DNA of 64,000 nucleotides from the IMG/VR virus record IMGVR_UViG_3300046660_000716, positions 62,001-126,000 of that record. One strand, given 5' to 3'. The position numbers and the translations under genes were made by a program. Every line of letters starts with the position of its first letter. Position 1 is the stretch's first letter. Under the pieces are notes generated by a model, which saw only the letters and a program-made list of their open reading frames with translations, had not been told where the DNA came from and ran no database searches. Of this stretch, positions 26,130-62,892 are shown one piece after another.

Positions 26130-27056
26130 ATGCACATCAAGGACATACAGCCAACGGAGCACGGCTGGGTCATCTACCTGACCCGCAACGGCGAGACCGG
26201 CCCGATGCTCAACGTCGGCCGCATGGACGACGATCCGGTGGCGTGCCTCATGCGCCGCCTGGAAACCGAGGCGGCCCGCCAGTGGACCATCGCCACGGCG
26301 CCGCAGGGGCTCGTGCCGGTCTATAGCCGCCGCCCGGACCCGATCGGCGAACTGGAACCCCGCCGCCCCAACGCGAACGACGAGGCCATCGCGCTCTATG
26401 CCAGCATGGGCGGAGTAGTCCTGGACTCCGACACGGAATTCACGGACTACCCCATCGAGAGCTGGTCCAAGACCGACAAGGGCTACGACCTGAACATCGA
26501 CGGCGGAACGCTGCACGTGACGCCGGAGGACTTCACGCCGGCCGAGCCGCTGACCAGCGTGCGCATCTACGGCAATGCACGCACGATGCAGATCCGCGGA
26601 CTGATGCTGGACGGCAAGCTGGTCCACTACCGTACCCCGGGCGAGTACCGGCAGGACTCGCTGAACGCCAAGTACGCGGCCACGGGCGCCGAGTGGCTCG
26701 AGCGCTGGGATCGCGGCGAGGTCGTCTACTCCGTCAAGATGGCGGGCATGTACGGGCCGGCAGTCGAGCAGATCATCCAGATCACCGCGGCGGAGAACCT
26801 CCGCGTGATGGTCAACCGCAAGATGGATGTGGCCTTCTGGGCCAATCGCGACGCGTGGGAAGAGGATCGCAAGATCGTCTTCGATGCGTCGATCACCAAT
26901 CCCCGCATCGCAGGGCTTGGTCTGGGCGGCAACCAGTTCAGCGCTGCGCTGAGCCTGGCAGTCGCCCTCTACAAGGACGGCCCCGTCGTGGCCGTCGGCA
27001 CGCAAACGCAGGAGCGCCAGATCATGGTCTCCAGCACGTTTCCCACCGTTGTATGA
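26130..27056 (+). CDS. hypothetical protein
   Basis: 308 aa with a good SD. Confidence 0.8.
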   Translation: MHIKDIQPTEHGWVIYLTRNGETGPMLNVGRMDDDPVACLMRRLETEAARQWTIATAPQGLVPVYSRRPDPIGELEPRRPNANDEAIALYASMGGVVLDSDTEFTDYPIESWSKTDKGYDLNIDGGTLHVTPEDFTPAEPLTSVRIYGNARTMQIRGLMLDGKLVHYRTPGEYRQDSLNAKYAATGAEWLERWDRGEVVYSVKMAGMYGPAVEQIIQITAAENLRVMVNRKMDVAFWANRDAWEEDRKIVFDASITNPRIAGLGLGGNQFSAALSLAVALYKDGPVVAVGTQTQERQIMVSSTFPTVV

Positions 27057-27211
27057 AGGGGGTGATGCCATGGGCGATAACGACCACGTGATCGGCATCT
27101 GAGCCGGCTGAGGGGCAGTCCAGCGGCCCCGCATATGGCGCCCGTCCTTGCGCAGGACGGGCACGTCAACACACTCATGGGAGCTCCGGCCGGAGCTCTC
27201 TTTTTTTTTTT
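27057..27211 (+). other. structured intergenic element (3 hairpins, terminator, 10-codon ORF)
   Basis: GATGCC..GGCATC, GGGGC..GCCCC, GCCCGTCCT-tgcgc-AGGACGGGC, GAGCTCCGG/CCGGAGCTC plus T11. Confidence 0.45.
27181..27211 (+). terminator. intrinsic terminator
   Basis: 18-bp palindrome plus T11. Confidence 0.85.
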
Positions 27212-27229
27212 GCCATTTGCGGAAGCTGT

Positions 27230-27697
27230 ATGACAGGATACATCAGAGTAGGCAACAAGCACGGCGGGAAAGAGATCCTGGCCGAGGGCGAGGCGATGGT
27301 ATCCGTCGACCGGGGGACCGACTTCGGGAACCCCTGGCCGCTGAGGGACGCGAAGGACGACGCGGCGAGGAACCTGTGCTGCGACAGGTTCGCGCGCATG
27401 GCGGATCGCGACATGGCCGTGCACGGCCCCATCTGGCGGGCGGTGCAGGAGCTGGCACGCCGCGTCATGGACGGAGAGCGCATCGTCCTGATGTGCTGGT
27501 GCACGCCGAAGCGGTGCCACGGACACTACATAGCCATGCTCGTCGAACGGGTCGTGGCGCAACTAACGGAAGCTAAAAATGAACGTATGCGGAGAGCAGT
27601 GCCGGCGCGCAGGACTGGCGACGCCGTCGAACGCCGTGGGAACGGAGGTCCAGTTCTTCGATCCAACTACCGGCTGGACCGCGACGCCGAAGACTAA
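27230..27697 (+). CDS. DUF4326-family protein
   Basis: VDRGTDFGNPW..LMCWCTPKRCHG. Confidence 0.75.
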   Translation: MTGYIRVGNKHGGKEILAEGEAMVSVDRGTDFGNPWPLRDAKDDAARNLCCDRFARMADRDMAVHGPIWRAVQELARRVMDGERIVLMCWCTPKRCHGHYIAMLVERVVAQLTEAKNERMRRAVPARRTGDAVERRGNGGPVLRSNYRLDRDAED

Positions 27698-27794
27698 GTT
27701 CGGCACCTGCCGCGAGGCGTGCAAGGCGCTGAGCGAGGTTCCCGAGGGGAAGGAGGCGCGCCTCTACGCGACGCTGGGAGAGGCCCATGGCTAA
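27579..27794 (+). CDS. hypothetical protein
   Basis: 71 aa; overlaps the DUF4326 tail; 8-nt overlap with the next gene. Confidence 0.5.
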   Translation: MNVCGEQCRRAGLATPSNAVGTEVQFFDPTTGWTATPKTKFGTCREACKALSEVPEGKEARLYATLGEAHG

Positions 27795-28530
27795 GCTGAC
27801 ACCCGACAAGCGCGCCCGGATCGAGAAGCTGGTGGTCTCGGCCTTCGCCGCCCTCGACGAAACGGGCGCGAACGCGGCCAAGTACGAGAAGGAGCTCAAG
27901 GGAATGAGCGACGCCCAGTTCACGAGGTGGCTGGACGAGTTCGTTCGCAACGAGGACAAGCACTTCTACCTGGACGTGCAGCCCTTCCACAACGAACCGA
28001 CGCTGGAGCAGATCGAGAAGGCTGCCAAGATCACCGGCACGAAGCTCCACCAGTACGTCTACTTCAAGCACGACGGCGCCCAGGGCGACCCGGTGCGCAC
28101 CGCGAAGCGCCTGCCCTGCGGCTACATCCACGTCCGCCGCCTGCAGCAGATCCTGGCCAAGAAGACGTCCTACTCGACCGAGGCCAGCAAGCGCAGCCAG
28201 CTGACAGGCCAGCTCTCAGGCGACGACGCCGTTGGCCGCCTGGCCGACGAAGAGGCGTACGCCCTCAAGACCGTCGGCGCCAACGCCATCCTGCGCGAGC
28301 TCCTGGGTCCGCGCGCCGACAACCGGGGCAAGCGCCTCGGCATGTACCACGCGATCGAGCGCGACGGCTACGTGCAGTACAAGGACCTCGTGGGCGACAC
28401 GAAGGACCAGCCGACGCTGAACTACCTCAACACGCTGCTCCTGGCGGCCGGGCTCAAGTCCGACCTCGTCGACTCGACCGAGCTGCTGCGCGTGAGCGTC
28501 GATCGCCCCATCGAAAACCAAAGGAAATGA
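27787..28530 (+). CDS. virion RNA polymerase beta C-terminal subunit (SPN3US gp244-like)
   Basis: GYIHVRRLQQILAKK..LTGQ..GRLADEEAYAL..GANAILRELLGPRAD corresponds to the RpoB C-terminus. The N-terminus YEKELKGMSDAQF and the size of about 245 aa match the small vRNAP beta-C subunit. Confidence 0.8.
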   Translation: MAKLTPDKRARIEKLVVSAFAALDETGANAAKYEKELKGMSDAQFTRWLDEFVRNEDKHFYLDVQPFHNEPTLEQIEKAAKITGTKLHQYVYFKHDGAQGDPVRTAKRLPCGYIHVRRLQQILAKKTSYSTEASKRSQLTGQLSGDDAVGRLADEEAYALKTVGANAILRELLGPRADNRGKRLGMYHAIERDGYVQYKDLVGDTKDQPTLNYLNTLLLAAGLKSDLVDSTELLRVSVDRPIENQRK

Positions 28531-28531
28531 C

Positions 28532-29086
28532 ATGATCATCGAAGACATGGGCCTCATGGAGGCCCTCGAGATGCCGTACGCACCGATCAAGATCTGCGCC
28601 GCCGGTCTGACCGGCACCTCCGGCACCTACGCGCGCGCCGACCCGATCTACGACGACGTGGCCGCCGTCCTGGCCGCGATGCCGGCCGCGTGCCCGTTCG
28701 ACGCGAAGACGCTGCGCGAGGAGGCACACGTGACCATCGTGTACTCCCGCGAGCACGCCGCCGACATGTCGCTCATCGACAAGTCCGCGTTCGACCTGCG
28801 CTGCATCGAAGCCAAGATCACCGGCATCGAGCACTGGGACGGCCACGACGGCGACGGGTACGTCGTACTGAAGCTGGCGAGCGAGTCGCTGGCGGCCTGG
28901 AACCGCTACCTGATCGACGCGGGCGCCCAGCATAGCTTCCCGGACTACTCGCCACACCTGAGCCTCTGCTCCAAGGCCGGCCCGAAGACGCCGGAGATGG
29001 TGAGCTGGATGGAGTCGGCGTGCGAGAAGCTGGTGGGCATGTGCCTGTGCTTCGACGCCATCATCATCGAAGACATCAAGAAGTAG
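28532..29086 (+). CDS. acb1: anti-CBASS nuclease Acb1-like 2H phosphoesterase (T4 gp57B family)
   Basis: GTYA, HVTIVYSR and GAQHSFPDYSPHLSL, versus recalled T4 GLYV, HSTICYSR and GATHDFDDYTPHITL. Confidence 0.85.
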   Translation: MIIEDMGLMEALEMPYAPIKICAAGLTGTSGTYARADPIYDDVAAVLAAMPAACPFDAKTLREEAHVTIVYSREHAADMSLIDKSAFDLRCIEAKITGIEHWDGHDGDGYVVLKLASESLAAWNRYLIDAGAQHSFPDYSPHLSLCSKAGPKTPEMVSWMESACEKLVGMCLCFDAIIIEDIKK

Positions 29087-29089
29087 GCC

Positions 29090-29437
29090 ATGGACCTCCT
29101 CGAGCCCGTCGAGCTGATGGAGGCGTACAGCGAGTACCGGAGCTTCTTCTTCCACCAGGGGCGCCGGTACAGCCTCAACAAACTGCTCGCCGCCACGGCC
29201 AAGCTAAAGACCGAGCGGGTGCCCATGTCCAGGCTGGCGTGGAACCTGGCCGGCGACGCCGACCCGGAGCGCGTGGCCGCCGCCGATCCGTCCGTGCCCA
29301 TCCTGGTCTTCCGCCAGGGCACGCGCGAGGTGATCGTCGACGGGCTGCACCGCACCAAGAAGGCGCTCGCCCTCGGCGACTCCTCGATGGGCGCGCGCCG
29401 CATCTCCCAGTCCATGCTGAACGCCGCCGCCCTGTAG
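29090..29437 (+). CDS. stand-alone ParB/Sulfiredoxin-like domain protein
   Basis: VPILV....VIVDGLHR.KKAL. Confidence 0.75.
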   Translation: MDLLEPVELMEAYSEYRSFFFHQGRRYSLNKLLAATAKLKTERVPMSRLAWNLAGDADPERVAAADPSVPILVFRQGTREVIVDGLHRTKKALALGDSSMGARRISQSMLNAAAL

Positions 29438-29464
29438 GGGCGTCGGAGCCCCGCAGAGCGAGCG

Positions 29465-29472
29465 CATATCAT
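29465..29472 (+). promoter_or_regulatory. CATATCAT motif
   Basis: Intergenic. Confidence 0.6.
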
Positions 29473-29542
29473 GCGTTTGAACCAACAGAGACCATGCGCC
29501 CAAAGGCGCATGGTCCTCTTTCCAACCTTTCAGGAGCCGACC

Positions 29543-29680
29543 ATGAGAACCCTCACCACACTCGCGCTGCTCGCCGCCCTGGCGGTCTGCATCGACAACG
29601 TAGCAAACGACGGCCGCTTCAGCGACCGCGCCCTGGTCCTCTTGAAGAGCGGGATCGATTACGCACGCACACAGTCATAA
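29543..29680 (+). CDS. small hydrophobic/exported peptide
   Basis: SD AGGAG; MRTLTTLALLAALAVC. Confidence 0.55.
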   Translation: MRTLTTLALLAALAVCIDNVANDGRFSDRALVLLKSGIDYARTQS

Positions 29681-29696
29681 GACGAAAGGAAGCAAG

Positions 29697-30152
29697 ATGC
29701 TGAAGCAAGAGCCACGCCCGACCCTGTCCCCGGTCAAGATCACCAAGCAGTGCGCCAGGAAGTTCGGCGACGCCGAGACCATCGCCATGCTGCTGAACGA
29801 CGCGACCCGGACGCTGAGCGACTACGCCGGCCGGGCGCACCGCGACGACCGCTCCGTCGTGGCCGCCTGCGCCCTGCAGTACGCCAAGGAGCTGGACGGC
29901 GGGGTGCCGCACGTCGTCACCTGGCTGCTGGACGCGATCGCCCTGGACCTGTCCGACTCCCAGCTCGGCTCCCACGCCGCGGATATCCTGCGCTCCGCCT
30001 CCACGGCGGCCTCCGAGTCGATCAACGCGGCCGGCTGCTGGATGACCAAGTACGTCGGCTCCCACGGGCGCGGCCGCCACGAGGCCATCCTCCAGCACAC
30101 CGCCGGGATCGGCGCCCTCGTGCGCCACGCGCAGCGCCGCACGCTGATGTGA
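29697..30152 (+). CDS. hypothetical protein
   Basis: SD AAGGAAG; 151 aa. Confidence 0.75.
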   Translation: MLKQEPRPTLSPVKITKQCARKFGDAETIAMLLNDATRTLSDYAGRAHRDDRSVVAACALQYAKELDGGVPHVVTWLLDAIALDLSDSQLGSHAADILRSASTAASESINAAGCWMTKYVGSHGRGRHEAILQHTAGIGALVRHAQRRTLM

Positions 30153-30177
30153 CCGTAGGAGCCCCGAAAAGCGGGCC

Positions 30178-30185
30178 CATATCAT
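30178..30185 (+). promoter_or_regulatory. CATATCAT motif
   Basis: Intergenic. Confidence 0.65.
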
Positions 30186-30238
30186 ACTCTCGAACCGATA
30201 GCCGTACTACCTCAACCCCACAAGAAAGGTACCACACC

Positions 30239-30949
30239 ATGACCACCGCAGCCAACAACGCACAAGACGCAACCAACAACGCCAACGAAGAAGCCAAGGG
30301 CGCAGAGCAGCCGAAGGCCAAGAAGGAGTCCCTGTGGAACCGCATGAAGGCGAAGGCCAAGGCCGCCACCACGCCGACGCCGCGCAACCACGGCATGATC
30401 CACGCCCAGGCCTCGAAGGCCATCATGGAAGACACCGACACCTCCTACAGCGAGCGTCGCGTCGCGGCCCTGGCCGGCCTGGTGGACACCTACGCCACGT
30501 TCAAGTTCATCCCGGCCAACGCCTGGATCCTGCGCCTGATCGACTACACCCGCATGTACGTCCTGCGCAATCCCGGTGCCGTGGGCATGGTCGTCTTCGC
30601 CGAAGAGCTGGTCCTGCAGCTCAAGACGATGAACGCCAGCGCCGGCCTGGACTCCGCCAAGAAGGCCATCGACGTCATCGACAGCATCGTCAAGCTGCTG
30701 GGAGTGAAGAACACGGTCAGCAAGAGCAACATGGACAAGTACTACAAGGGCAAGGACAAGCTGCTGCACGCCGAGACCGAGGCCATCCTGAAAGAGATGC
30801 GCTCGATGGTCCGTTACACCAACGTGCCGCCACAGTGGTCGCTGATCAATCTGGACGCTCCTGTCGTGGAAGAGCGCGCCATCCGCAAGTCCGTGGACAT
30901 CGACCCGGTGCAGTCCATGCACGACGGCGAGCTGATCGCCGCCGAATGA
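30239..30949 (+). CDS. hypothetical protein
   Basis: Strongly biased codons; ATG 30239 follows an A/C-rich leader. Confidence 0.8.
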   Translation: MTTAANNAQDATNNANEEAKGAEQPKAKKESLWNRMKAKAKAATTPTPRNHGMIHAQASKAIMEDTDTSYSERRVAALAGLVDTYATFKFIPANAWILRLIDYTRMYVLRNPGAVGMVVFAEELVLQLKTMNASAGLDSAKKAIDVIDSIVKLLGVKNTVSKSNMDKYYKGKDKLLHAETEAILKEMRSMVRYTNVPPQWSLINLDAPVVEERAIRKSVDIDPVQSMHDGELIAAE

Positions 30950-58038: not shown

Positions 58039-61000
58039 TTACGCGGTGGTCCAGGTGCCGAAGCCGCCAGTGATGTGCCAGACGTAGGTGCTGGCACCGG
58101 TCTGCACGCACGTCAGCATGACGCTGGCGTTGGTCTCCGTCGCGGTCGAGTTCGTCAGAGTGCCCGCCGCCGTGGAGTCCTGTATGGTATCAGTTCCCAC
58201 GGCTTTGATCACGAAGTTCTGAGCGTTGACCTTGAAGAAGCGCAGGGTCTGGCCCACCATCGTCGAGCCTGCAGGCAGGGTGTCGGTGATGGCGCCCGCT
58301 GCACCGCGGTTGGTCAGCATCGAGCCGACGTCCGTCGACAGCACCGTGTAGGATGCGGTTTTCGGGTTGTCGACCAGGGCCGCAGCCGCGCCGTCCGTGA
58401 TGCCGTAGCCGGCCAGGGTGGTCGGCTTGCCGGTGATGCTGGCGAAGGCAGGGGTCACGGTCACATTCGCAGCCAGGACCAGGCGGCCCTTGGAGTCGAC
58501 CGTGAAGGTCGGGATCTGGGTCGCCGAGCCGTAGGCCGCCGCCGCCACCGCCGTGTTGGCCAGAGTCAGAGCGCCCGTCGCCGCAGCCGAGCCGTCGAAG
58601 TTCGTCGTCCAGGTGGCGTCGCCGGTGATCGAGATCGCCCGAGCGGTCGCCAGCTTGGTCGCCGTGTCGGCGTTGCCCGTGACGTTGCCCGTGACGTTGC
58701 CGGTCACGTTGCCCGCGACGTTGCCCTGCAGGTTCATCTGGGCGGTGCCCACCGAGCCGCTGAAGACCTCGCCGGTGTTCGACGCGTCCGGGATGAACGT
58801 GAAGAAGCCGGTGGAGTCGTCGAAGCCGAAGTAGCCCACCTTCGCGGTGGTGCCGTTGTGCCAGCGGTACTCGATGCCGCGGTCCTTGTTGTCGTCGACG
58901 GTCGGAGCCGTGTCGCCGCCCAGGGTGAAGATAGGGTCGTCGATGGTCACGGTCGTCGAGTTGAACGTGGTCGTGGTGCCGTTGAACGTCACGTTGCCCG
59001 TGAAGGTGGTGGTGCCGTTCACGACCAGCGACGCGGCGGTCAGCGCGCCCGCGGTCGTCAGGTTGGCCGAGCCAGCCCAGGTGGACAGCGCGGTGTTCTC
59101 CACGTTGCCCAGTCCGACGGCCGCGGCGTTCAGCGCTGCCATCACCTTGTCGCCGCGGTAGTACTGCGCCGCGGTGCCAGCAGCGATGAGCGGCTGCGAG
59201 TCAGTGATGCCGTATCCGGCCAGGGTGGTCGGCAGGCCCGTGATGTTGGCGAAGGCCGGGGTCACGGTCACGTTGGCCGCCAGGACCAGGCGGCCCTTGG
59301 AATCGACCGTGAAGGTCGGGATCTGGGAGCCGGAGCCGTAGGCCGCCGCCGCCACGGCGGTGTTGGCCAGGGTCAGCGCGCCGGTGGCGTTGGCCGAGCC
59401 GTCGAAGCTGGTGGTCCAGGTGGCGTCGCCGGTGATCGAGACGCTGCGGGCGGTCGCCAGCTTGGTCGCGGTCGAGGCGTTGCCCGTGAAGCCGGCCGTC
59501 GTGTTGATGGTCAGCTTGTTGTTGACGTCGTCGTAGGCCACCGAGATGTTGGTGCCGGAGACGATGTCCAGGCGCTCGGCCGTGGTGTACGAGATCTGCG
59601 CGCTGGTGCCGTCGCCGATCGACAGCGTGTGCGTGTGGTTGGACAGCGCCGCGTCGGTGATGCCGTAGCCGGCCAGGGTGGTCGGCTTGGACGTGATGCT
59701 TGAGAACAGCGGCGTGATCGTCACCGGCGCGCCGACGCTGATGATGCGGCCCTTGGAGTCGACCGTGTACGGCGTGACCGCGGTCGCCGTCGCGTTGTAC
59801 GTGCCGGCGGCGACGCCCGATGCGGCCAGCGTCATGGCGCCCGTGGCTGCGGCGGTGCCGTCGAAGTTCGTCGTCCAGGTGCCGTCGCCGGTCATGGAGA
59901 TCGCGCGGGTCGTCGCCAGAGCCGTGGCGGTCGAGGCGTTGCCCGTGAAGCCTGCGGTCGTGTTGACCGTGAGCTTATTGGTGGCGTCGTCGTAGACCAG
60001 CGAGATGTTCGTGCCGGACACGATGTCCAGGCGATCGCTGGTCAGGTAGTTGATCTGCGTCGCGGTCCCGTCGCCGATCTTCAGCGCGTGGGTGTGCACC
60101 AGCGGCGCAGCGTCGGTGATGCCGTAGCCGCCCAGCGTGGTCGGCAGACCCGTGATGTTGGCGAACGCCGGGGTCACGGCGGTGCTACCGGCGACGGTCA
60201 GGCGACCCTTGGAGTCGACCGTGAAGGTCGGAACCAGGGCGCCCGAGCCGTAGGAGGCCGCAGCGACGCCGGTGTTGGCCAGCGTGCCGGCAGCCGTGGC
60301 GTTGGCCGAGCCGTCGAAGTTGGTGGTCCAGGACACGTCGCCGGTCATCGAGATCGAGCGGGCGTTGGCCAGCTTGGTCGCGGTGTCGGCATTGCCGGTG
60401 AAGCTCGCGCTCGAACCGATCGTGATCTTGTTGTTGACGTCGTCGTAGGCCACCGTGATGTTGCTGCCCGACACGATGTCCAGGCGGTCGCTGGTGAGGT
60501 AGTTCACCCGCGCGGCGGTCCCGTCGCCGATCGTCAGCGCGTGGGTGTGCACCAGGGCCGCGGCGTCGGTGATGCCGTAGCCGCCCAGCGTGGTGGGCTT
60601 GCCGGTCACGCTGGCGAAGGCCGGGGTGATCGTGACCGCGGCGCCGGTTGCCACGATGCGGCCCTTGGCGTCCACGGTGAACGGCGTGATCGCGGTCGCC
60701 GAGTTGTTGTACTGGGCGGCGGCGACGCCGGTGTTGGCCAGCGTCAGGGCGCCGGTCGCGGCAGCGGTGCCGTCAAAATTCGTCGTCCAGGTGGCGTCGC
60801 CGGTGATCGAGATCGCACGGCTGGTGGCCAGAGCGGTCGCAGTCGAGGCGTTACCGGTCACGGCGCCCGTCAGGTTGCCGGTGACGTTGCCCAGCAGGTT
60901 AGCCTCCAGGGTGCCCACCGCGCCGGAGAAGACCTCGCCGGCATTCACCGCGTCCGGGATGAAGGTCATGCGGCCGGTGCTTCGGTCGAAGCCGAAGAAG

Positions 61001-62892
61001 CCAACCTTGGCCGCGCCGTTGTACCAGCGGTACTCGATGCCGCGGTCCTTGCCGTCGTCCAGCACCGGAGCGGTGTCGCCGCCCAGGGTCAGGATCGGGT
61101 CGTCCAGTGTCACGGTGGTCGAGTTGACGGTGGTCGTGGGGCCGTTGAAGACCACGGCTCCGGTGACGGTCAGCGAGTCCACGGTCAGGGCACCCGCGGT
61201 CGTCAGGTTCGACGAGCCAGCCCAGGTGGACAGCGCGGTGTTCTCCACCAGACCCAAGCCGACTGCGGCCTTGTCCAGGGTCGCGAAGACCTTGTCACCG
61301 CGGTAGTACTGTGCGGCGGTGCCAGCTGCGATCAGGCCCTGCGCGTCGACGATGCCGTACCCGGCCAGGGTGGTGGGCTTGCCCGTGACGCTGGCGAAGG
61401 CCGGGGTGATCGTGACAGGAGCGCCGGTCGCGACAATGCGGCCCTTCGCGTCCACAGTGAACGGCGTCACCTGGGTCGCCGAGTTGTTGTAGGTGCCGGC
61501 GGCTACGGCGGTGTTGGCCAGGGTGGCCGCGCCGGTGGCGTTGCCGCTGCCGTCGAAGTTCGTGGTCCAGGTCACGTCGCCGGTGGACGAGATCGAGCGG
61601 CTGGTGGCCAGCTTGGTCGCGGTGTCGGCGTTGCCGGTGAAGGAGCCGCTGGTGCCGATCGTGATCTTGTTGTTGACGTCGTCGTAGCCGATGGTGACGT
61701 TGGCGCCGGAGACGATGTCGAGGCGCTCTGCGGACGTGAACGAGATCTGGCTCGCGGTGCCGTCGCCGATGGACAGGGCGTGGGTGTGGCCAGCCAGCGC
61801 CGCGTCGGTGATGCCGTAGCCGGCCACGGTGGTCGGCGTGTTGGTCACGCTGCCCCAGGCCGGGGTGATCGTGACGGCCGGGCCCACGAAGGTCAGGCGG
61901 CCCTTGGCATCCACGGTGTACGGCGACAGCTGGGTGGCCGAGTTGTTGTAGGCTCCCGCAGCGACGCCGGAGTCGCCGAAGGTGATCGCAATGTCAGCGG
62001 CGGCGTGGCCGTCGAACTGCACGGTGCCGGACGCGTCGCCCGAGACGGACAGCGCCACGGCGTTGGCCAGCTTGGTAGCGGTGGACGCATTGCCAGCCAG
62101 GGCCGCGGTCACGGTGCCGGCGGCGAAGTTGCCGCTCGCGTCGCGGTAGACCAGGGTGCTAGGCGTGTTCAGGTTGTCCGAGGCGATGACGATCTGCGGG
62201 CTCGCCGCCTGTCCGTCGCCGTTGGCCACGCTCACGCCCAGACCGGTCGCGCCGATGGTGCGCAGTGCGGCGGCGCCGTCGGCCGTGCGGGCCAGCATGC
62301 CGGTGCCGGTCAGGGCGGCGATCGCCGTCAGGTCCGAGTCCAGCGCCTGCGCGTCGGTGATGCCGTAGCCAGCGCGGGTGGTCGGCTTGCCGGTCAGGTT
62401 GGTGAACGTGTGGGTGTGGCTGTCGTTCAGCACGGTGACGGTGATCGTTGCGTCGTCGGAGCCGTCGAAGAAGACGGAGCCGGTGGCGTCGCCGCCGAGC
62501 TGGATGATGCGCGCGGTCAGCAGCTTCGTCGCGGTCGCGGCGTTGCCGACGCCCTGGCCCGAGGCCAGCAGGTCGCGCAGCGACTTCTGGTTGACGATCT
62601 GGCCGTCGGGGGACTGGCCGTCCAGGTTCGGCGCCAGCGGCACGCCTGTCAGGTGCGGCGAGTCCAGCGACGCCAGGAGTGCGAGGGCGTTCTGCAGGCC
62701 GACGATCTCCGAGATGCCGTGCGTGTGGTCGGAGTTGGCGGTCAGGATGCCGCCGGGGGTGATGCCGTCCTGGACGCGGATCTGCTTCAGATCCATGTCA
62801 ATCACGACTTCACCGAACTGGCCGATGTACGCCGCTGCCAGCTCCGTGGTGCCGCGCTTCAGGCGGATATTGCGGATTTCAGTAGTGCTCAT
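58039..62892 (-). CDS. long tail fibre protein with Mtd_N-like head and modular repeats
   Basis: IRLKRGT..GE..D..QDG.TPGG N-terminus; 8x GNAxTAT..FDG..KPTTLxGYGITD; six HTH motifs; 2x DDPI.TLGGD..DRGIEYRW. Confidence 0.9.
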   Translation of the reverse strand: MSTTEIRNIRLKRGTTELAAAYIGQFGEVVIDMDLKQIRVQDGITPGGILTANSDHTHGISEIVGLQNALALLASLDSPHLTGVPLAPNLDGQSPDGQIVNQKSLRDLLASGQGVGNAATATKLLTARIIQLGGDATGSVFFDGSDDATITVTVLNDSHTHTFTNLTGKPTTRAGYGITDAQALDSDLTAIAALTGTGMLARTADGAAALRTIGATGLGVSVANGDGQAASPQIVIASDNLNTPSTLVYRDASGNFAAGTVTAALAGNASTATKLANAVALSVSGDASGTVQFDGHAAADIAITFGDSGVAAGAYNNSATQLSPYTVDAKGRLTFVGPAVTITPAWGSVTNTPTTVAGYGITDAALAGHTHALSIGDGTASQISFTSAERLDIVSGANVTIGYDDVNNKITIGTSGSFTGNADTATKLATSRSISSTGDVTWTTNFDGSGNATGAATLANTAVAAGTYNNSATQVTPFTVDAKGRIVATGAPVTITPAFASVTGKPTTLAGYGIVDAQGLIAAGTAAQYYRGDKVFATLDKAAVGLGLVENTALSTWAGSSNLTTAGALTVDSLTVTGAVVFNGPTTTVNSTTVTLDDPILTLGGDTAPVLDDGKDRGIEYRWYNGAAKVGFFGFDRSTGRMTFIPDAVNAGEVFSGAVGTLEANLLGNVTGNLTGAVTGNASTATALATSRAISITGDATWTTNFDGTAAATGALTLANTGVAAAQYNNSATAITPFTVDAKGRIVATGAAVTITPAFASVTGKPTTLGGYGITDAAALVHTHALTIGDGTAARVNYLTSDRLDIVSGSNITVAYDDVNNKITIGSSASFTGNADTATKLANARSISMTGDVSWTTNFDGSANATAAGTLANTGVAAASYGSGALVPTFTVDSKGRLTVAGSTAVTPAFANITGLPTTLGGYGITDAAPLVHTHALKIGDGTATQINYLTSDRLDIVSGTNISLVYDDATNKLTVNTTAGFTGNASTATALATTRAISMTGDGTWTTNFDGTAAATGAMTLAASGVAAGTYNATATAVTPYTVDSKGRIISVGAPVTITPLFSSITSKPTTLAGYGITDAALSNHTHTLSIGDGTSAQISYTTAERLDIVSGTNISVAYDDVNNKLTINTTAGFTGNASTATKLATARSVSITGDATWTTSFDGSANATGALTLANTAVAAAAYGSGSQIPTFTVDSKGRLVLAANVTVTPAFANITGLPTTLAGYGITDSQPLIAAGTAAQYYRGDKVMAALNAAAVGLGNVENTALSTWAGSANLTTAGALTAASLVVNGTTTFTGNVTFNGTTTTFNSTTVTIDDPIFTLGGDTAPTVDDNKDRGIEYRWHNGTTAKVGYFGFDDSTGFFTFIPDASNTGEVFSGSVGTAQMNLQGNVAGNVTGNVTGNVTGNADTATKLATARAISITGDATWTTNFDGSAAATGALTLANTAVAAAAYGSATQIPTFTVDSKGRLVLAANVTVTPAFASITGKPTTLAGYGITDGAAAALVDNPKTASYTVLSTDVGSMLTNRGAAGAITDTLPAGSTMVGQTLRFFKVNAQNFVIKAVGTDTIQDSTAAGTLTNSTATETNASVMLTCVQTGASTYVWHITGGFGTWTTA
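58671..58730. repeat. 12-bp tandem repeat x5 (GNVT peptide repeat)
   Basis: CGTTGCCCGTGA-like unit, five consecutive copies. Confidence 0.9.

What the first reader, a model, noticed from the sequence alone, without database searches (positions are those of the whole stretch)
28535..29076. acb1 is bracketed by a perfect, in-frame 14-bp direct repeat
Seen: ATCATCGAAGACAT at 28535-28548 (codons 2-6, IIEDM) and at 29063-29076 (IIEDI, just before KK-stop), 528 bp (176 codons) apart. Recombination would leave ATG-ATC-ATC-GAA-GAC-ATC-AAG-AAG-TAG (MIIEDIKK) and keep the operon's coupling intact. Inference: an insertion scar or a precisely excisable anti-CBASS cassette giving ON/OFF heterogeneity. Alternatively, a functional IIED peptide at both termini.
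Basis: partly seen in the sequence, partly recalled or inferred. Interest (0 to 1): 0.6.

Follow-up and report, generated by a model that had tools for sequence, protein, structure and literature searches.

The report
Chance terminal repeat in phage acb1
The 14-base repeat at both ends of this jumbo phage's anti-CBASS gene is real, but it is most likely a by-product of two conserved protein end-motifs and strong codon bias, not an insertion scar or an on/off excision switch.

Summary
ATCATCGAAGACAT occurs exactly twice in the window, at 28535-28548 and 29063-29076. The copies are 528 bp apart and in frame, inside a 184-aa Acb1-family 2H phosphodiesterase (28532-29086) of a 259-kb, 66% GC jumbo phage.

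The main interpretation does not hold. Eight related contigs all carry acb1 downstream of the same RNA-polymerase-fragment gene. None has an empty site and none has the repeat. The one available run, held only as contigs, shows no 528-bp deletion.

Each copy lies in a separately conserved peptide motif:
- The 5' copy is in a flexible acidic N-terminal tail, M-I-phi-E-(D/E)-phi-x-L-phi-E-A.
- The 3' copy is in the family-wide last beta-strand, phi-x-phi-E-D-phi-K.

Codon bias (ATC 92%, GAC 89%) and a preference for GAA at gene ends turn similar peptides into identical DNA. The 9-nt core CGAAGACAT recurs at both ends of acb1 in two relatives.

The full 14-nt match is still unusual: about 0.02 gene-bracketing cases are expected per genome. 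A small DNA-level copying event therefore cannot be excluded.

Verdict: an ordinary new Acb1 of the N-terminal-lid class, with an incidental repeat. Low interest.

The parts
28535..28548 (+). Repeat copy 1: ATCATCGAAGACAT, codons 2-5 (I-I-E-D) plus the AT of M6
29063..29076 (+). Repeat copy 2: ATCATCGAAGACAT, I178-I179-E180-D181 plus the AT of I182
28532..29086 (+). acb1 CDS (184 aa), an Acb1-family 2H phosphodiesterase
   Evidence: Pfam PF23474 scores 66.6 bits against a cut-off of 27. phrog_755 matches. The AF2 model has pLDDT 93.3. Foldseek's top matches are 9q2y/9q2g and 7t26.
28532..28573 (+). N-terminal acidic tail, residues 1-14 (MIIEDMGLMEALEM). It matches the subfamily motif M-I-phi-E-(D/E)-phi-x-L-phi-E-A, is predicted flexible, and holds copy 1.
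   Evidence: Alignments. AF2 gives coil for residues 1-19, with mean pLDDT 59 for residues 1-10 and 79 for 11-20.
29042..29083 (+). C-terminal element, residues 171-184. It is the last beta-strand (E171-180) plus EDIKK, carries the family-wide motif phi-x-phi-E-D-phi-K, and holds copy 2.
   Evidence: AF2 secondary structure. C-termini of 65 and 159 family members.
28727..28735 (+). First catalytic H-x-T motif (H66-V-T68)
   Evidence: H66 is invariant and T68 nearly invariant in alignments A2 and A3.
28955..28963 (+). Second catalytic H-x-S/T motif (H142-L-S144)
   Evidence: H142 is invariant in A3.
28521..28527 (+). Shine-Dalgarno-like AAGGAAA, 5-11 nt before the acb1 ATG. It overlaps the end of the upstream gene and supports M1 as the true start.
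   Evidence: Sequence read. Homologues align from residue 1.
27787..28530 (+). Upstream gene: a phage multisubunit RNA polymerase beta-subunit fragment (247 aa). It is the conserved syntenic anchor.
   Evidence: phrog_3233 and phrog_23439 match. tblastn finds AR9, PBS1 and phiR1-37. Relatives are 61-84% identical.
29090..29437 (+). Downstream gene (115 aa, phrog_17560). Its N-terminus MDLLEPVELMEA carries the same L-M-E-A tail motif as Acb1.

Best explanation
The repeat is real sequence identity but not a genetic element. It is a by-product of protein-level constraint on both ends of a resident acb1 gene, combined with codon bias.

The gene encodes an Acb1-family 2H phosphodiesterase. By homology it would cleave cyclic-oligonucleotide immune signals such as those of CBASS. 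It belongs to the structural class of the Burkholderia phage BCSR5 enzyme PDE-9, whose lid is N-terminal.

In this subfamily the protein starts with a flexible acidic tail, M-I-phi-E-(D/E)-phi-x-L-phi-E-A. It ends with the last core beta-strand, phi-x-phi-E-D-phi-K. In this phage both motifs happen to read I-I-E-D followed by M or I.

Ile is ATC in 92% of cases and Asp is GAC in 89%. GAA, rare inside genes, is the preferred or common Glu codon at gene ends. The same peptide is therefore encoded by the same 14 nt.

Shown here: the repeat, the conservation of each motif, the structural setting, the codon statistics, the conserved synteny, and the absence of the repeat and of empty sites in relatives. 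Inferred: that the coincidence of the two Ile residues is chance, and that no selection acts on the DNA repeat as such.
For: 1. Both copies lie in conserved peptide motifs.
- C-termini of family members read IIEDLKH, CVEDIKK, SIEDLKE, IVEDVN, IIDDIRK, KVEDIKR and similar. A (E/D)-D-phi C-terminal motif, almost always E-D-phi, followed by a polar (often basic) residue is found in at least 36 of 159 representatives.
- N-termini of the long subfamily read MINDELDLMEA, MHMESIELLEA, MMYEDMSLMEA, MILTEDMDLMG and MIMEESMDLTLA.
- These motifs hold across loci of 29-69% GC with different codons, so the conservation is at protein level.

2. The two copies encode different structural elements. Residues 1-19 are low-confidence coil. 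Residues 171-180 are a confident beta-strand.

3. The 9-nt core CGAAGACAT (E-D-M at the start, E-D-I at the end) recurs at both ends of acb1 in L016 and L017. That is 3 of 11 loci read at DNA level.

4. Codon usage explains the DNA identity. ATC is 0.918 of Ile codons and GAC 0.891 of Asp codons. GAA is 0.57 of Glu codons at positions 2-9, 0.35 in the last 8 codons, and 0.146 in gene interiors. From these numbers, identical peptides at these positions give identical DNA with probability about 0.15.

5. acb1 is an old resident of this site. It lies downstream of the RNAP-fragment gene in 8 of 8 relatives. The flanking protein is 61-84% identical while Acb1 is only 35-43% identical. A perfect scar could not have survived that much divergence.

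6. Repeats of at least 14 nt within 600 bp are common in this genome: 21 observed against 6.5 expected from codon shuffling.

7. No deletion joint appears in the available contigs.
Against: - The full 14-nt match at both gene ends remains improbable. About 0.02 such genes are expected per genome.
- IIED occurs only 3 times in about 79,800 residues, and two of those are in this protein.
- My rough estimate from the small family alignments is of the order of 1e-4 per lineage for the complete match. The motifs explain the E-D-phi core well. They explain the two Ile residues only weakly: Ile at N-terminal position 3 is seen only here.
- Rare deletion variants could not be examined. Only assembled contigs were available, not raw reads.
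Confidence: 0.7

Rival explanations
1. Short-patch DNA homogenisation. The two ends already shared the 9-nt core CGAAGACAT. A transient template switch or slipped mispairing during replication then copied a few adjacent bases (ATCAT) from one site to the other. The change was tolerated because Ile-Ile fits both motifs. The repeat would record a real DNA-level event but would have no function.
For: The complete match is rarer than the motifs alone predict. The 9-nt core exists as a pre-existing microhomology in relatives. Ile at N-terminal position 3 is not seen in any other subfamily member.
Against: No direct evidence exists. Both end peptides look typical for the family, so no direction of copying can be read. 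The shared GAA codon, which might have suggested copying, is explained by end-specific codon usage. Such events between sites 528 bp apart are themselves rare (general knowledge).
Confidence: 0.15
2. A functional pairing of the two IIED peptides. The identical end peptides would do the same job, for example by binding the same site or partner or by pairing with each other, and selection would keep them alike.
For: Both ends are conserved and both carry an acidic pair followed by a hydrophobic residue.
Against: In relatives the two ends differ from each other, for example MINDELD against LIIEDLKH and MHMESIE against ISIEDLKE. Likeness between the ends is therefore not conserved. One end is a disordered tail and the other a buried terminal strand of the fold. 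The short Acb1 forms lack the tail altogether.
Confidence: 0.06
3. A selected, precisely excisable cassette. Slippage or recombination between the 14-mers would remove acb1 in frame and create an acb1-minus subpopulation. That could be useful on hosts whose defences sense anti-CBASS proteins.
For: The repeat is in frame and the deletion would leave an 8-codon ORF with the gene spacing intact. Losing anti-CBASS genes can pay: Panoptes selects acb2 loss-of-function mutants, and over-expressed acb1 reduced colony formation with Panoptes (PMC12657218). L017 carries an acb1 broken by frameshifts.
Against: No deletion joint in the run's contigs. No empty site in 8 relatives and no repeat in 10 homologous loci. 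This genome has 21 comparable repeats. A 14-nt repeat gives only rare and irreversible deletion, so OFF could not return to ON (general knowledge). Deleting acb1 in T4 had no effect on Panoptes defence.
Confidence: 0.04
4. An insertion scar. acb1 would have entered this site recently, by integration of a circular intermediate at the 14-mer or with a target-site duplication.
For: A direct repeat brackets almost exactly one gene. The number of small genes between the RNAP fragment and acb1 varies from 0 to 6 among relatives, so the region is plastic.
Against: The repeat lies inside the coding sequence, in residues that are conserved in homologues. The implied empty site is a meaningless 8-codon ORF. 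acb1 occupies this position in all 8 relatives despite only 35-43% protein identity. No integrase, transposase, homing endonuclease or inverted repeats flank it. Its GC3 matches its neighbours.
Confidence: 0.03

Closest known systems
Burkholderia phage BCSR5 2H phosphodiesterase PDE-9 (PDB 9Q2G closed, 9Q2Y open; bioRxiv 10.1101/2025.08.21.671373)
   Same: It is the best structural match (Foldseek E 1.6e-10, TM 0.82-0.84 normalised by the target) and the best PDB sequence match (E 9e-11). Both have two H-x-T/S motifs. Both end right after the last beta-strand with no C-terminal lid. In PDE-9 the lid is the N-terminal 15 residues, which align roughly with residues 15-30 here.
   Different: Only 24-29% identical. 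The window protein carries about 14 further N-terminal residues, the acidic tail that holds repeat copy 1, which PDE-9 lacks. PDE-9's C-terminus (LKATRMM) lacks the E-D-phi-K motif.
T4 / Erwinia phage FBB1 Acb1 (PDB 7T26, 7T27; PMC9117128)
   Same: Same Pfam family (PF23474) and the same 2H fold and catalytic histidines. The aromatic positions Y33, W102 and F136 are conserved and probably correspond to Y12, W74 and F107.
   Different: T4 and FBB1 Acb1 close a C-terminal lid (residues 145-152, with W147) over the ligand. This protein has no such extension. It also sits in a different genomic context, beside RNA polymerase subunit genes of a jumbo phage.
Deletion between short direct repeats by replication slippage, as described for T4 rII and T7 (general knowledge)
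   Same: Any 14-nt direct repeat 528 bp apart is a possible substrate for rare, precise, RecA-independent deletion.
   Different: No deletion product was seen. The repeat is not conserved. The genome holds about 20 similar repeats. Nothing marks this one as selected for that role.
T4 capsid-targeting sequences of internal proteins (10-20-residue N-terminal propeptides removed by the prohead protease after Glu; PMC5694885)
   Same: The N-terminal tail is 10-13 residues long, acidic, and ends in L-x-E followed by Ala. It is shared by unrelated proteins of the clade.
   Different: This is a resemblance only. No virion proteomics exist. Only two proteins in this genome carry L-M-E-A. The protease specificity of this phage is unknown.

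Membership tests
Acb1 / 2H phosphoesterase (Pfam PF23474) | Profile match above the curated threshold | tested here: met
   66.6 bits against a cut-off of 27, E 2.6e-18, over residues 31-157.
Acb1 / 2H phosphoesterase (Pfam PF23474) | Two catalytic H-x-T/S motifs | tested here: met
   H66-V-T68 and H142-L-S144 are present. H66 and H142 are invariant in the 65-sequence alignment A3.
Acb1 / 2H phosphoesterase (Pfam PF23474) | 2H fold with a U-shaped beta-sheet pocket | tested here: met
   The AF2 model has pLDDT 93.3 and pTM 0.86. Foldseek's top hits are 9q2y, 9q2g, 7t26 and 7t27, followed by other 2H enzymes.
Acb1 / 2H phosphoesterase (Pfam PF23474) | C-terminal lid with a stacking Trp (T4/FBB1 type) | tested here: not met
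   The protein ends 4 residues after the last strand. It resembles the N-terminal-lid class of PDE-9 instead. The lid position varies within the family, so this does not exclude membership.
Acb1 / 2H phosphoesterase (Pfam PF23474) | Cleavage of cyclic di- or trinucleotides and rescue from CBASS | not testable with these tools
   This needs enzyme and plaque assays.
Mobile cassette with target-site duplication (insertion scar) | Presence/absence polymorphism at the site among relatives | tested here: not met
   acb1 is present downstream of the RNAP-fragment gene in L009, L010, L011, L013, L014, L015, L016 and L017. No empty site was seen.
Mobile cassette with target-site duplication (insertion scar) | Mobility gene or terminal inverted repeats next to the unit; foreign composition | tested here: not met
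   The neighbours are an RNAP fragment, a DUF4326 protein and a phrog_17560 protein. Only weak scattered inverted repeats occur. GC3 is 0.95 against 0.93 and 0.97 in the neighbours.
Programmed or phase-variable deletion between direct repeats | Deletion allele present in the population | tested here: inconclusive
   The only run is kept as contigs. One 91-kb contig spans the locus unchanged and there is no joint from 28548 to 29077. Rare variants would not appear in contigs.
Programmed or phase-variable deletion between direct repeats | Repeat conserved at DNA level in homologues | tested here: not met
   The longest shared terminal word in ten homologous loci is 5-9 nt.
T4-type capsid-targeting propeptide (considered for the N-terminal tail only) | Short N-terminal peptide ending in a hydrophobic-x-Glu protease site, shared by several packaged proteins | tested here: inconclusive
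   The L-M-E|A pattern occurs at residues 8-11 of Acb1 and 9-12 of the next gene. It also occurs in L013's 115-aa protein and the N-domain of the Acb1 fusions. A genome-wide scan with a loose pattern gave 4 N-terminal hits against 1.6 expected.
T4-type capsid-targeting propeptide (considered for the N-terminal tail only) | Cleavage by the prohead protease and presence of the mature protein in virions | not testable with these tools
   This needs virion mass spectrometry.

The most novel reading that the evidence does not exclude
The 5' copy of the repeat lies in a short acidic N-terminal tag, about 10-13 residues ending in L-(M/L)-E followed by Ala. In this jumbo-phage clade the tag is shared by at least three unrelated proteins:
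- Acb1;
- the phrog_17560 protein encoded next to it;
- the roughly 100-aa domain that is fused to Acb1, or encoded just upstream of it, in relatives.

The most novel reading not excluded is that this tag is a targeting or propeptide signal, like the T4 capsid-targeting sequence. Acb1 would then be packaged into the virion beside the virion RNA polymerase and injected ready-made to destroy CBASS signals at the start of infection.

Probability: 0.1. Interest if true: 0.65.

Novelty: not a real feature. Interest (0 to 1): 0.15.

Why it matters
If the repeat had been an excision switch, it would have been the first built-in ON/OFF device for a phage counter-defence gene. That would matter now that bacterial systems are known to sense such genes. 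The evidence points the other way, and there are two practical lessons.
- In a strongly codon-biased genome, similar peptide motifs produce perfect DNA repeats. Codon usage at gene ends differs from that of gene interiors. Both must be allowed for before a short repeat is read as a recombination footprint.
- The gene itself extends the recently described N-terminal-lid class of Acb1-like phosphodiesterases to a clade of environmental jumbo phages, where it is a conserved but fast-evolving neighbour of RNA polymerase subunit genes.

The shared N-terminal tag is a small lead of its own.

Tried and rejected
Searches that gave little or nothing:
- Megablast of 27000-30500 against GenBank phages found no match.
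- The search for related loci in viral contigs with Acb1 and with the RNAP fragment found nothing. With the alignment of the RNAP fragment it found one distant locus, L012, at 36% identity and without acb1 within 3.5 kb.
- The metagenome-contig scan found nothing.
- The word-based protein search found only one Acb1 relative, and ten when given an alignment. I therefore used the exhaustive search, because the claim rests on relatives. It found 355 hits.
- Reads: one run, kept as contigs. I gave read laying 2,401 letters. The two listed 'joints' have 21-letter sides from unrelated low-depth contigs and do not sit at the repeat.

Ideas tested and dropped:
- The 14-mer as a regulatory motif spread over the genome. 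Only these 2 copies exist at up to 1 mismatch, and the looser matches are scattered in-frame coding hits.
- The shared rare GAA codon as evidence of DNA copying. GAA is 57% and 35% of Glu codons at gene starts and ends.
- L-M-E-A as a proteome-wide tag. There are only 2 exact cases, both in this gene pair.
- Homology between the downstream 115-aa gene and L013's 115-aa gene, which would imply a swap in gene order. The pairwise E-value is 1e-4 and rests largely on the tag, and they share no PHROG. Not supported.
- An internal start at M14, behind the GGAGG inside L-M-E-A. The tail is conserved as a peptide with different codons in AT-rich relatives, so it is translated.

No alternative genetic code was used.

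Full report
**What is there**

The window is positions 62001-126000 of a 259,338-bp viral contig with direct terminal repeats. The contig is 65.6% GC. The one public run that holds this sequence is a rhizosphere metagenome.

The ORF at 28532-29086 encodes a 184-aa protein that matches Pfam Acb1 (PF23474) at 66.6 bits against a cut-off of 27. It also matches phrog_755. It has the two catalytic motifs H66-V-T68 and H142-L-S144, and both histidines are invariant across 65 homologues.

An AlphaFold2 model built on that alignment is confident, with pLDDT 93.3. Its best structural matches are:
- the Burkholderia phage BCSR5 phosphodiesterase, 9q2y and 9q2g, with TM up to 0.84 normalised by the target;
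- FBB1 Acb1, 7t26.

The upstream gene (27787-28530) is a fragment of a phage multisubunit RNA polymerase beta subunit of the AR9/PBS1/phiR1-37 kind. The downstream gene (29090-29437) belongs to phrog_17560. The three genes are separated by 1 and 3 nt.

**The observation**

ATCATCGAAGACAT lies at 28535-28548 and 29063-29076, 528 nt apart and in frame. Identity extends to 17 of 18 nt. No further copy with up to 1 mismatch exists in the genome.

**How unusual is it?**

As a short-range repeat it is ordinary. Outside one repetitive gene region, the genome has 21 exact direct-repeat pairs of at least 14 nt within 600 bp. Genomes with codons shuffled within genes give 6.5 +/- 2.0. A 16-mer and another 14-mer link acb1 to the gene before it.

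Its placement is what is unusual. Among 298 rough gene calls, acb1 is the only one whose two ends share at least 14 nt. Random pairing of gene starts and ends puts the expectation near 0.02 per genome. The peptide IIED occurs three times in about 79,800 residues against 0.6 expected from composition, and twice in this protein. The coincidence therefore calls for an explanation, although the test was chosen after the fact.

**Relatives**

GenBank phages hold no close relative. The word-based search found one Acb1 at 47% identity. The exhaustive search found 355 homologues. About a dozen of them are 183-194 aa long and 35-46% identical.

I fetched contigs for several of these, and also contigs for homologues of the well-conserved upstream RNA polymerase fragment. 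In eight contigs (L009, L010, L011, L013, L014, L015, L016, L017) acb1 lies downstream of that fragment in the same orientation. Between the two genes there are 0 to 6 small genes. The flanking protein is 61-84% identical to the window's, while Acb1 is only 35-43% identical.

Further conserved genes follow in L008, L011 and L016: a RecA-like protein and a large RNA polymerase subunit. acb1 is thus an old, fast-evolving resident of this region. I saw no empty site.

At DNA level, none of ten homologous loci has a terminal repeat. The longest words shared by the two gene ends are 5-9 nt. The only run with this sequence is stored as contigs. One 91-kb contig crosses the locus unchanged and no joint sits at the repeat. 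That says nothing about rare variants.

**What the two copies encode**

The 3' copy lies in the last beta-strand of the fold (residues 171-180, confident in the model). It is followed by D-I-K-K. This end is conserved across the whole family as phi-x-phi-E-D-phi-K. Examples are IIEDLKH, CVEDIKK, SIEDLKE, KVEDIKR and IIDDIRK. At least 36 of 159 representatives end with a (E/D)-D-phi motif, nearly always E-D-phi, followed by a polar, often basic, residue.

The 5' copy lies in a low-confidence N-terminal coil. It belongs to a tail found only in the long subfamily: M-I-phi-E-(D/E)-phi-x-L-phi-E-A. Examples are MINDELDLMEA, MHMESIELLEA, MINDDPVELMEA, MMYEDMSLMEA, MILTEDMDLMG and MIMEESMDLTLA.

These loci range from 29% to 69% GC and use different codons for the same residues. 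Both motifs are therefore kept at protein level.

In PDE-9, the solved BCSR5 enzyme, residues 1-15 form the lid over the active site. T4 and FBB1 Acb1 use a C-terminal lid instead. By alignment, PDE-9's lid corresponds to about residues 15-30 here. The acidic tail is thus an extra 14 residues in front of the lid region.

**From similar peptides to identical DNA**

Ile is ATC in 91.8% of cases and Asp is GAC in 89.1%. Glu is GAA in only 14.6% of cases inside genes, but in 57% at codons 2-9 and 35% in the last eight codons. The shared 'rare' GAA is therefore expected at both positions.

With these numbers, identical I-I-E-D peptides at a gene start and a gene end have identical DNA with probability about 0.15. 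The core CGAAGACAT (E-D-M at the start, E-D-I at the end) is in fact found at both ends of acb1 in two other loci, L016 and L017. Nine of the fourteen bases are thus a recurrent consequence of the family's motifs.

The remaining five bases reflect Ile-Ile at both ends. Ile is common at N-terminal position 2, and Ile or Val is usual in the last strand. Ile at N-terminal position 3, however, is seen only here. My rough estimate for the full match is of the order of 1e-4 per lineage. It is a rare coincidence, found by a reader looking for oddities.

**Verdict on mechanisms**

The best explanation, at 0.7, is an incidental repeat produced by two conserved terminal motifs and codon bias.

A small DNA-level homogenisation between the pre-existing 9-nt microhomologies would explain the extra identity. 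It cannot be tested with these data, and I give it 0.15.

An insertion scar (0.03) is contradicted on four points:
- the conserved synteny;
- the position of both copies inside conserved coding sequence;
- the meaningless 8-codon 'empty' ORF it implies;
- the lack of any mobility gene, inverted repeats or compositional difference.

A selected excision switch (0.04) has no supporting observation. A selective rationale can be imagined: Panoptes selects loss of acb2, and over-expressed acb1 reduced colony formation with Panoptes, although deleting acb1 in T4 had no effect (PMC12657218). However, deletion between 14-nt repeats is rare and irreversible, the repeat is not conserved, and the genome has about twenty like it.

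**A side lead**

The N-terminal tail motif is not confined to Acb1.
- The next gene in the window starts MDLLEPVELMEA.
- In L013 a 115-aa protein encoded just before acb1 starts MTYDCNDTIELMEA.
- The same roughly 100-aa domain is fused to the front of Acb1 in L014 and L016, giving proteins of 293-294 aa, again with the tail at the very start.

These proteins are otherwise unrelated. In this genome exact L-M-E-A occurs only in these two adjacent genes, both times at residues 8-12.

A short acidic N-terminal peptide ending in L-x-E followed by Ala recalls the capsid-targeting propeptides of T4 internal proteins, which the prohead protease removes after a Glu (PMC5694885). The homologue of the upstream gene in phiR1-37 is annotated as a structural protein. 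This is only a resemblance. I give the 'packaged and injected Acb1' reading about 0.1.

- Read laying received 2,401 letters.
- No other genetic code was used.
- The exhaustive protein search was used only after the word search left a single relative.

Noticed in passing
window 29090-29125; L013:4238-4285; L014:4232-4270; L016:4241-4280: The acidic N-terminal tail motif of Acb1, ending in L-(M/L)-E-A, also starts the unrelated downstream gene (MDLLEPVELMEA). In relatives it starts a roughly 100-aa domain that is either a separate gene before acb1 (L013) or fused to Acb1 (L014 and L016, 293-294 aa). It may be a shared tag or propeptide.
   Followed up: partly
L010:2036-4004 and L017:255-1751: In two relatives the RNA polymerase beta-fragment gene is interrupted by an ORF of 347-349 aa with no clear Pfam family (a faint treble-clef zinc-finger hit in L017). 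The two halves of the polymerase fragment flank it. This looks like an intron or a free-standing endonuclease-type insertion.
   Followed up: partly
L017:1748-2320: The acb1 of this relative is read through only by changing frame twice, and it lacks a short stretch before the second His motif. It is either a decaying gene or an assembly error in a low-coverage contig.
   Followed up: partly
window 29441-29483 and 30154-30196: A 43-nt intergenic direct repeat (79% identity; the 28-nt core GGAGCCCCG..CATATCAT occurs only twice in the window). Each copy lies just after a gene end. It may be a regulatory or promoter-like element.
   Followed up: partly
window about 58400-62400: A dense set of 14-33-nt exact direct repeats at spacings of 453-459, 780-807, 912, 1239 and about 1700 nt. 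This indicates a gene or genes built of tandem repeated domains.
   Followed up: no
window 28024-28039 / 28811-28826 and 27822-27835 / 29023-29036: An exact 16-mer (GCCAAGATCACCGGCA) and an exact 14-mer (CGAGAAGCTGGTGG) are shared between the RNA polymerase fragment gene and acb1. They are examples of the background of short repeats in this codon-biased genome.
   Followed up: yes
window 28804-28814: A third near-copy of the repeat core, CATCGAAGCCA (10 of 11), lies almost midway between the two copies. It encodes I-E-A at the start of the central strand 92-102.
   Followed up: no
window 27179-27210: A strong terminator-like hairpin (9 pairs) followed by ten T's lies between the gene ending at 27056 and the DUF4326 gene (27230-27697). 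It probably marks the start of the transcription unit that includes acb1.
   Followed up: no
genome-wide (G000): Codon usage differs sharply at gene ends. GAA is 57% of Glu codons at positions 2-9 and 35% in the last eight codons, against 15% inside genes.
   Followed up: yes
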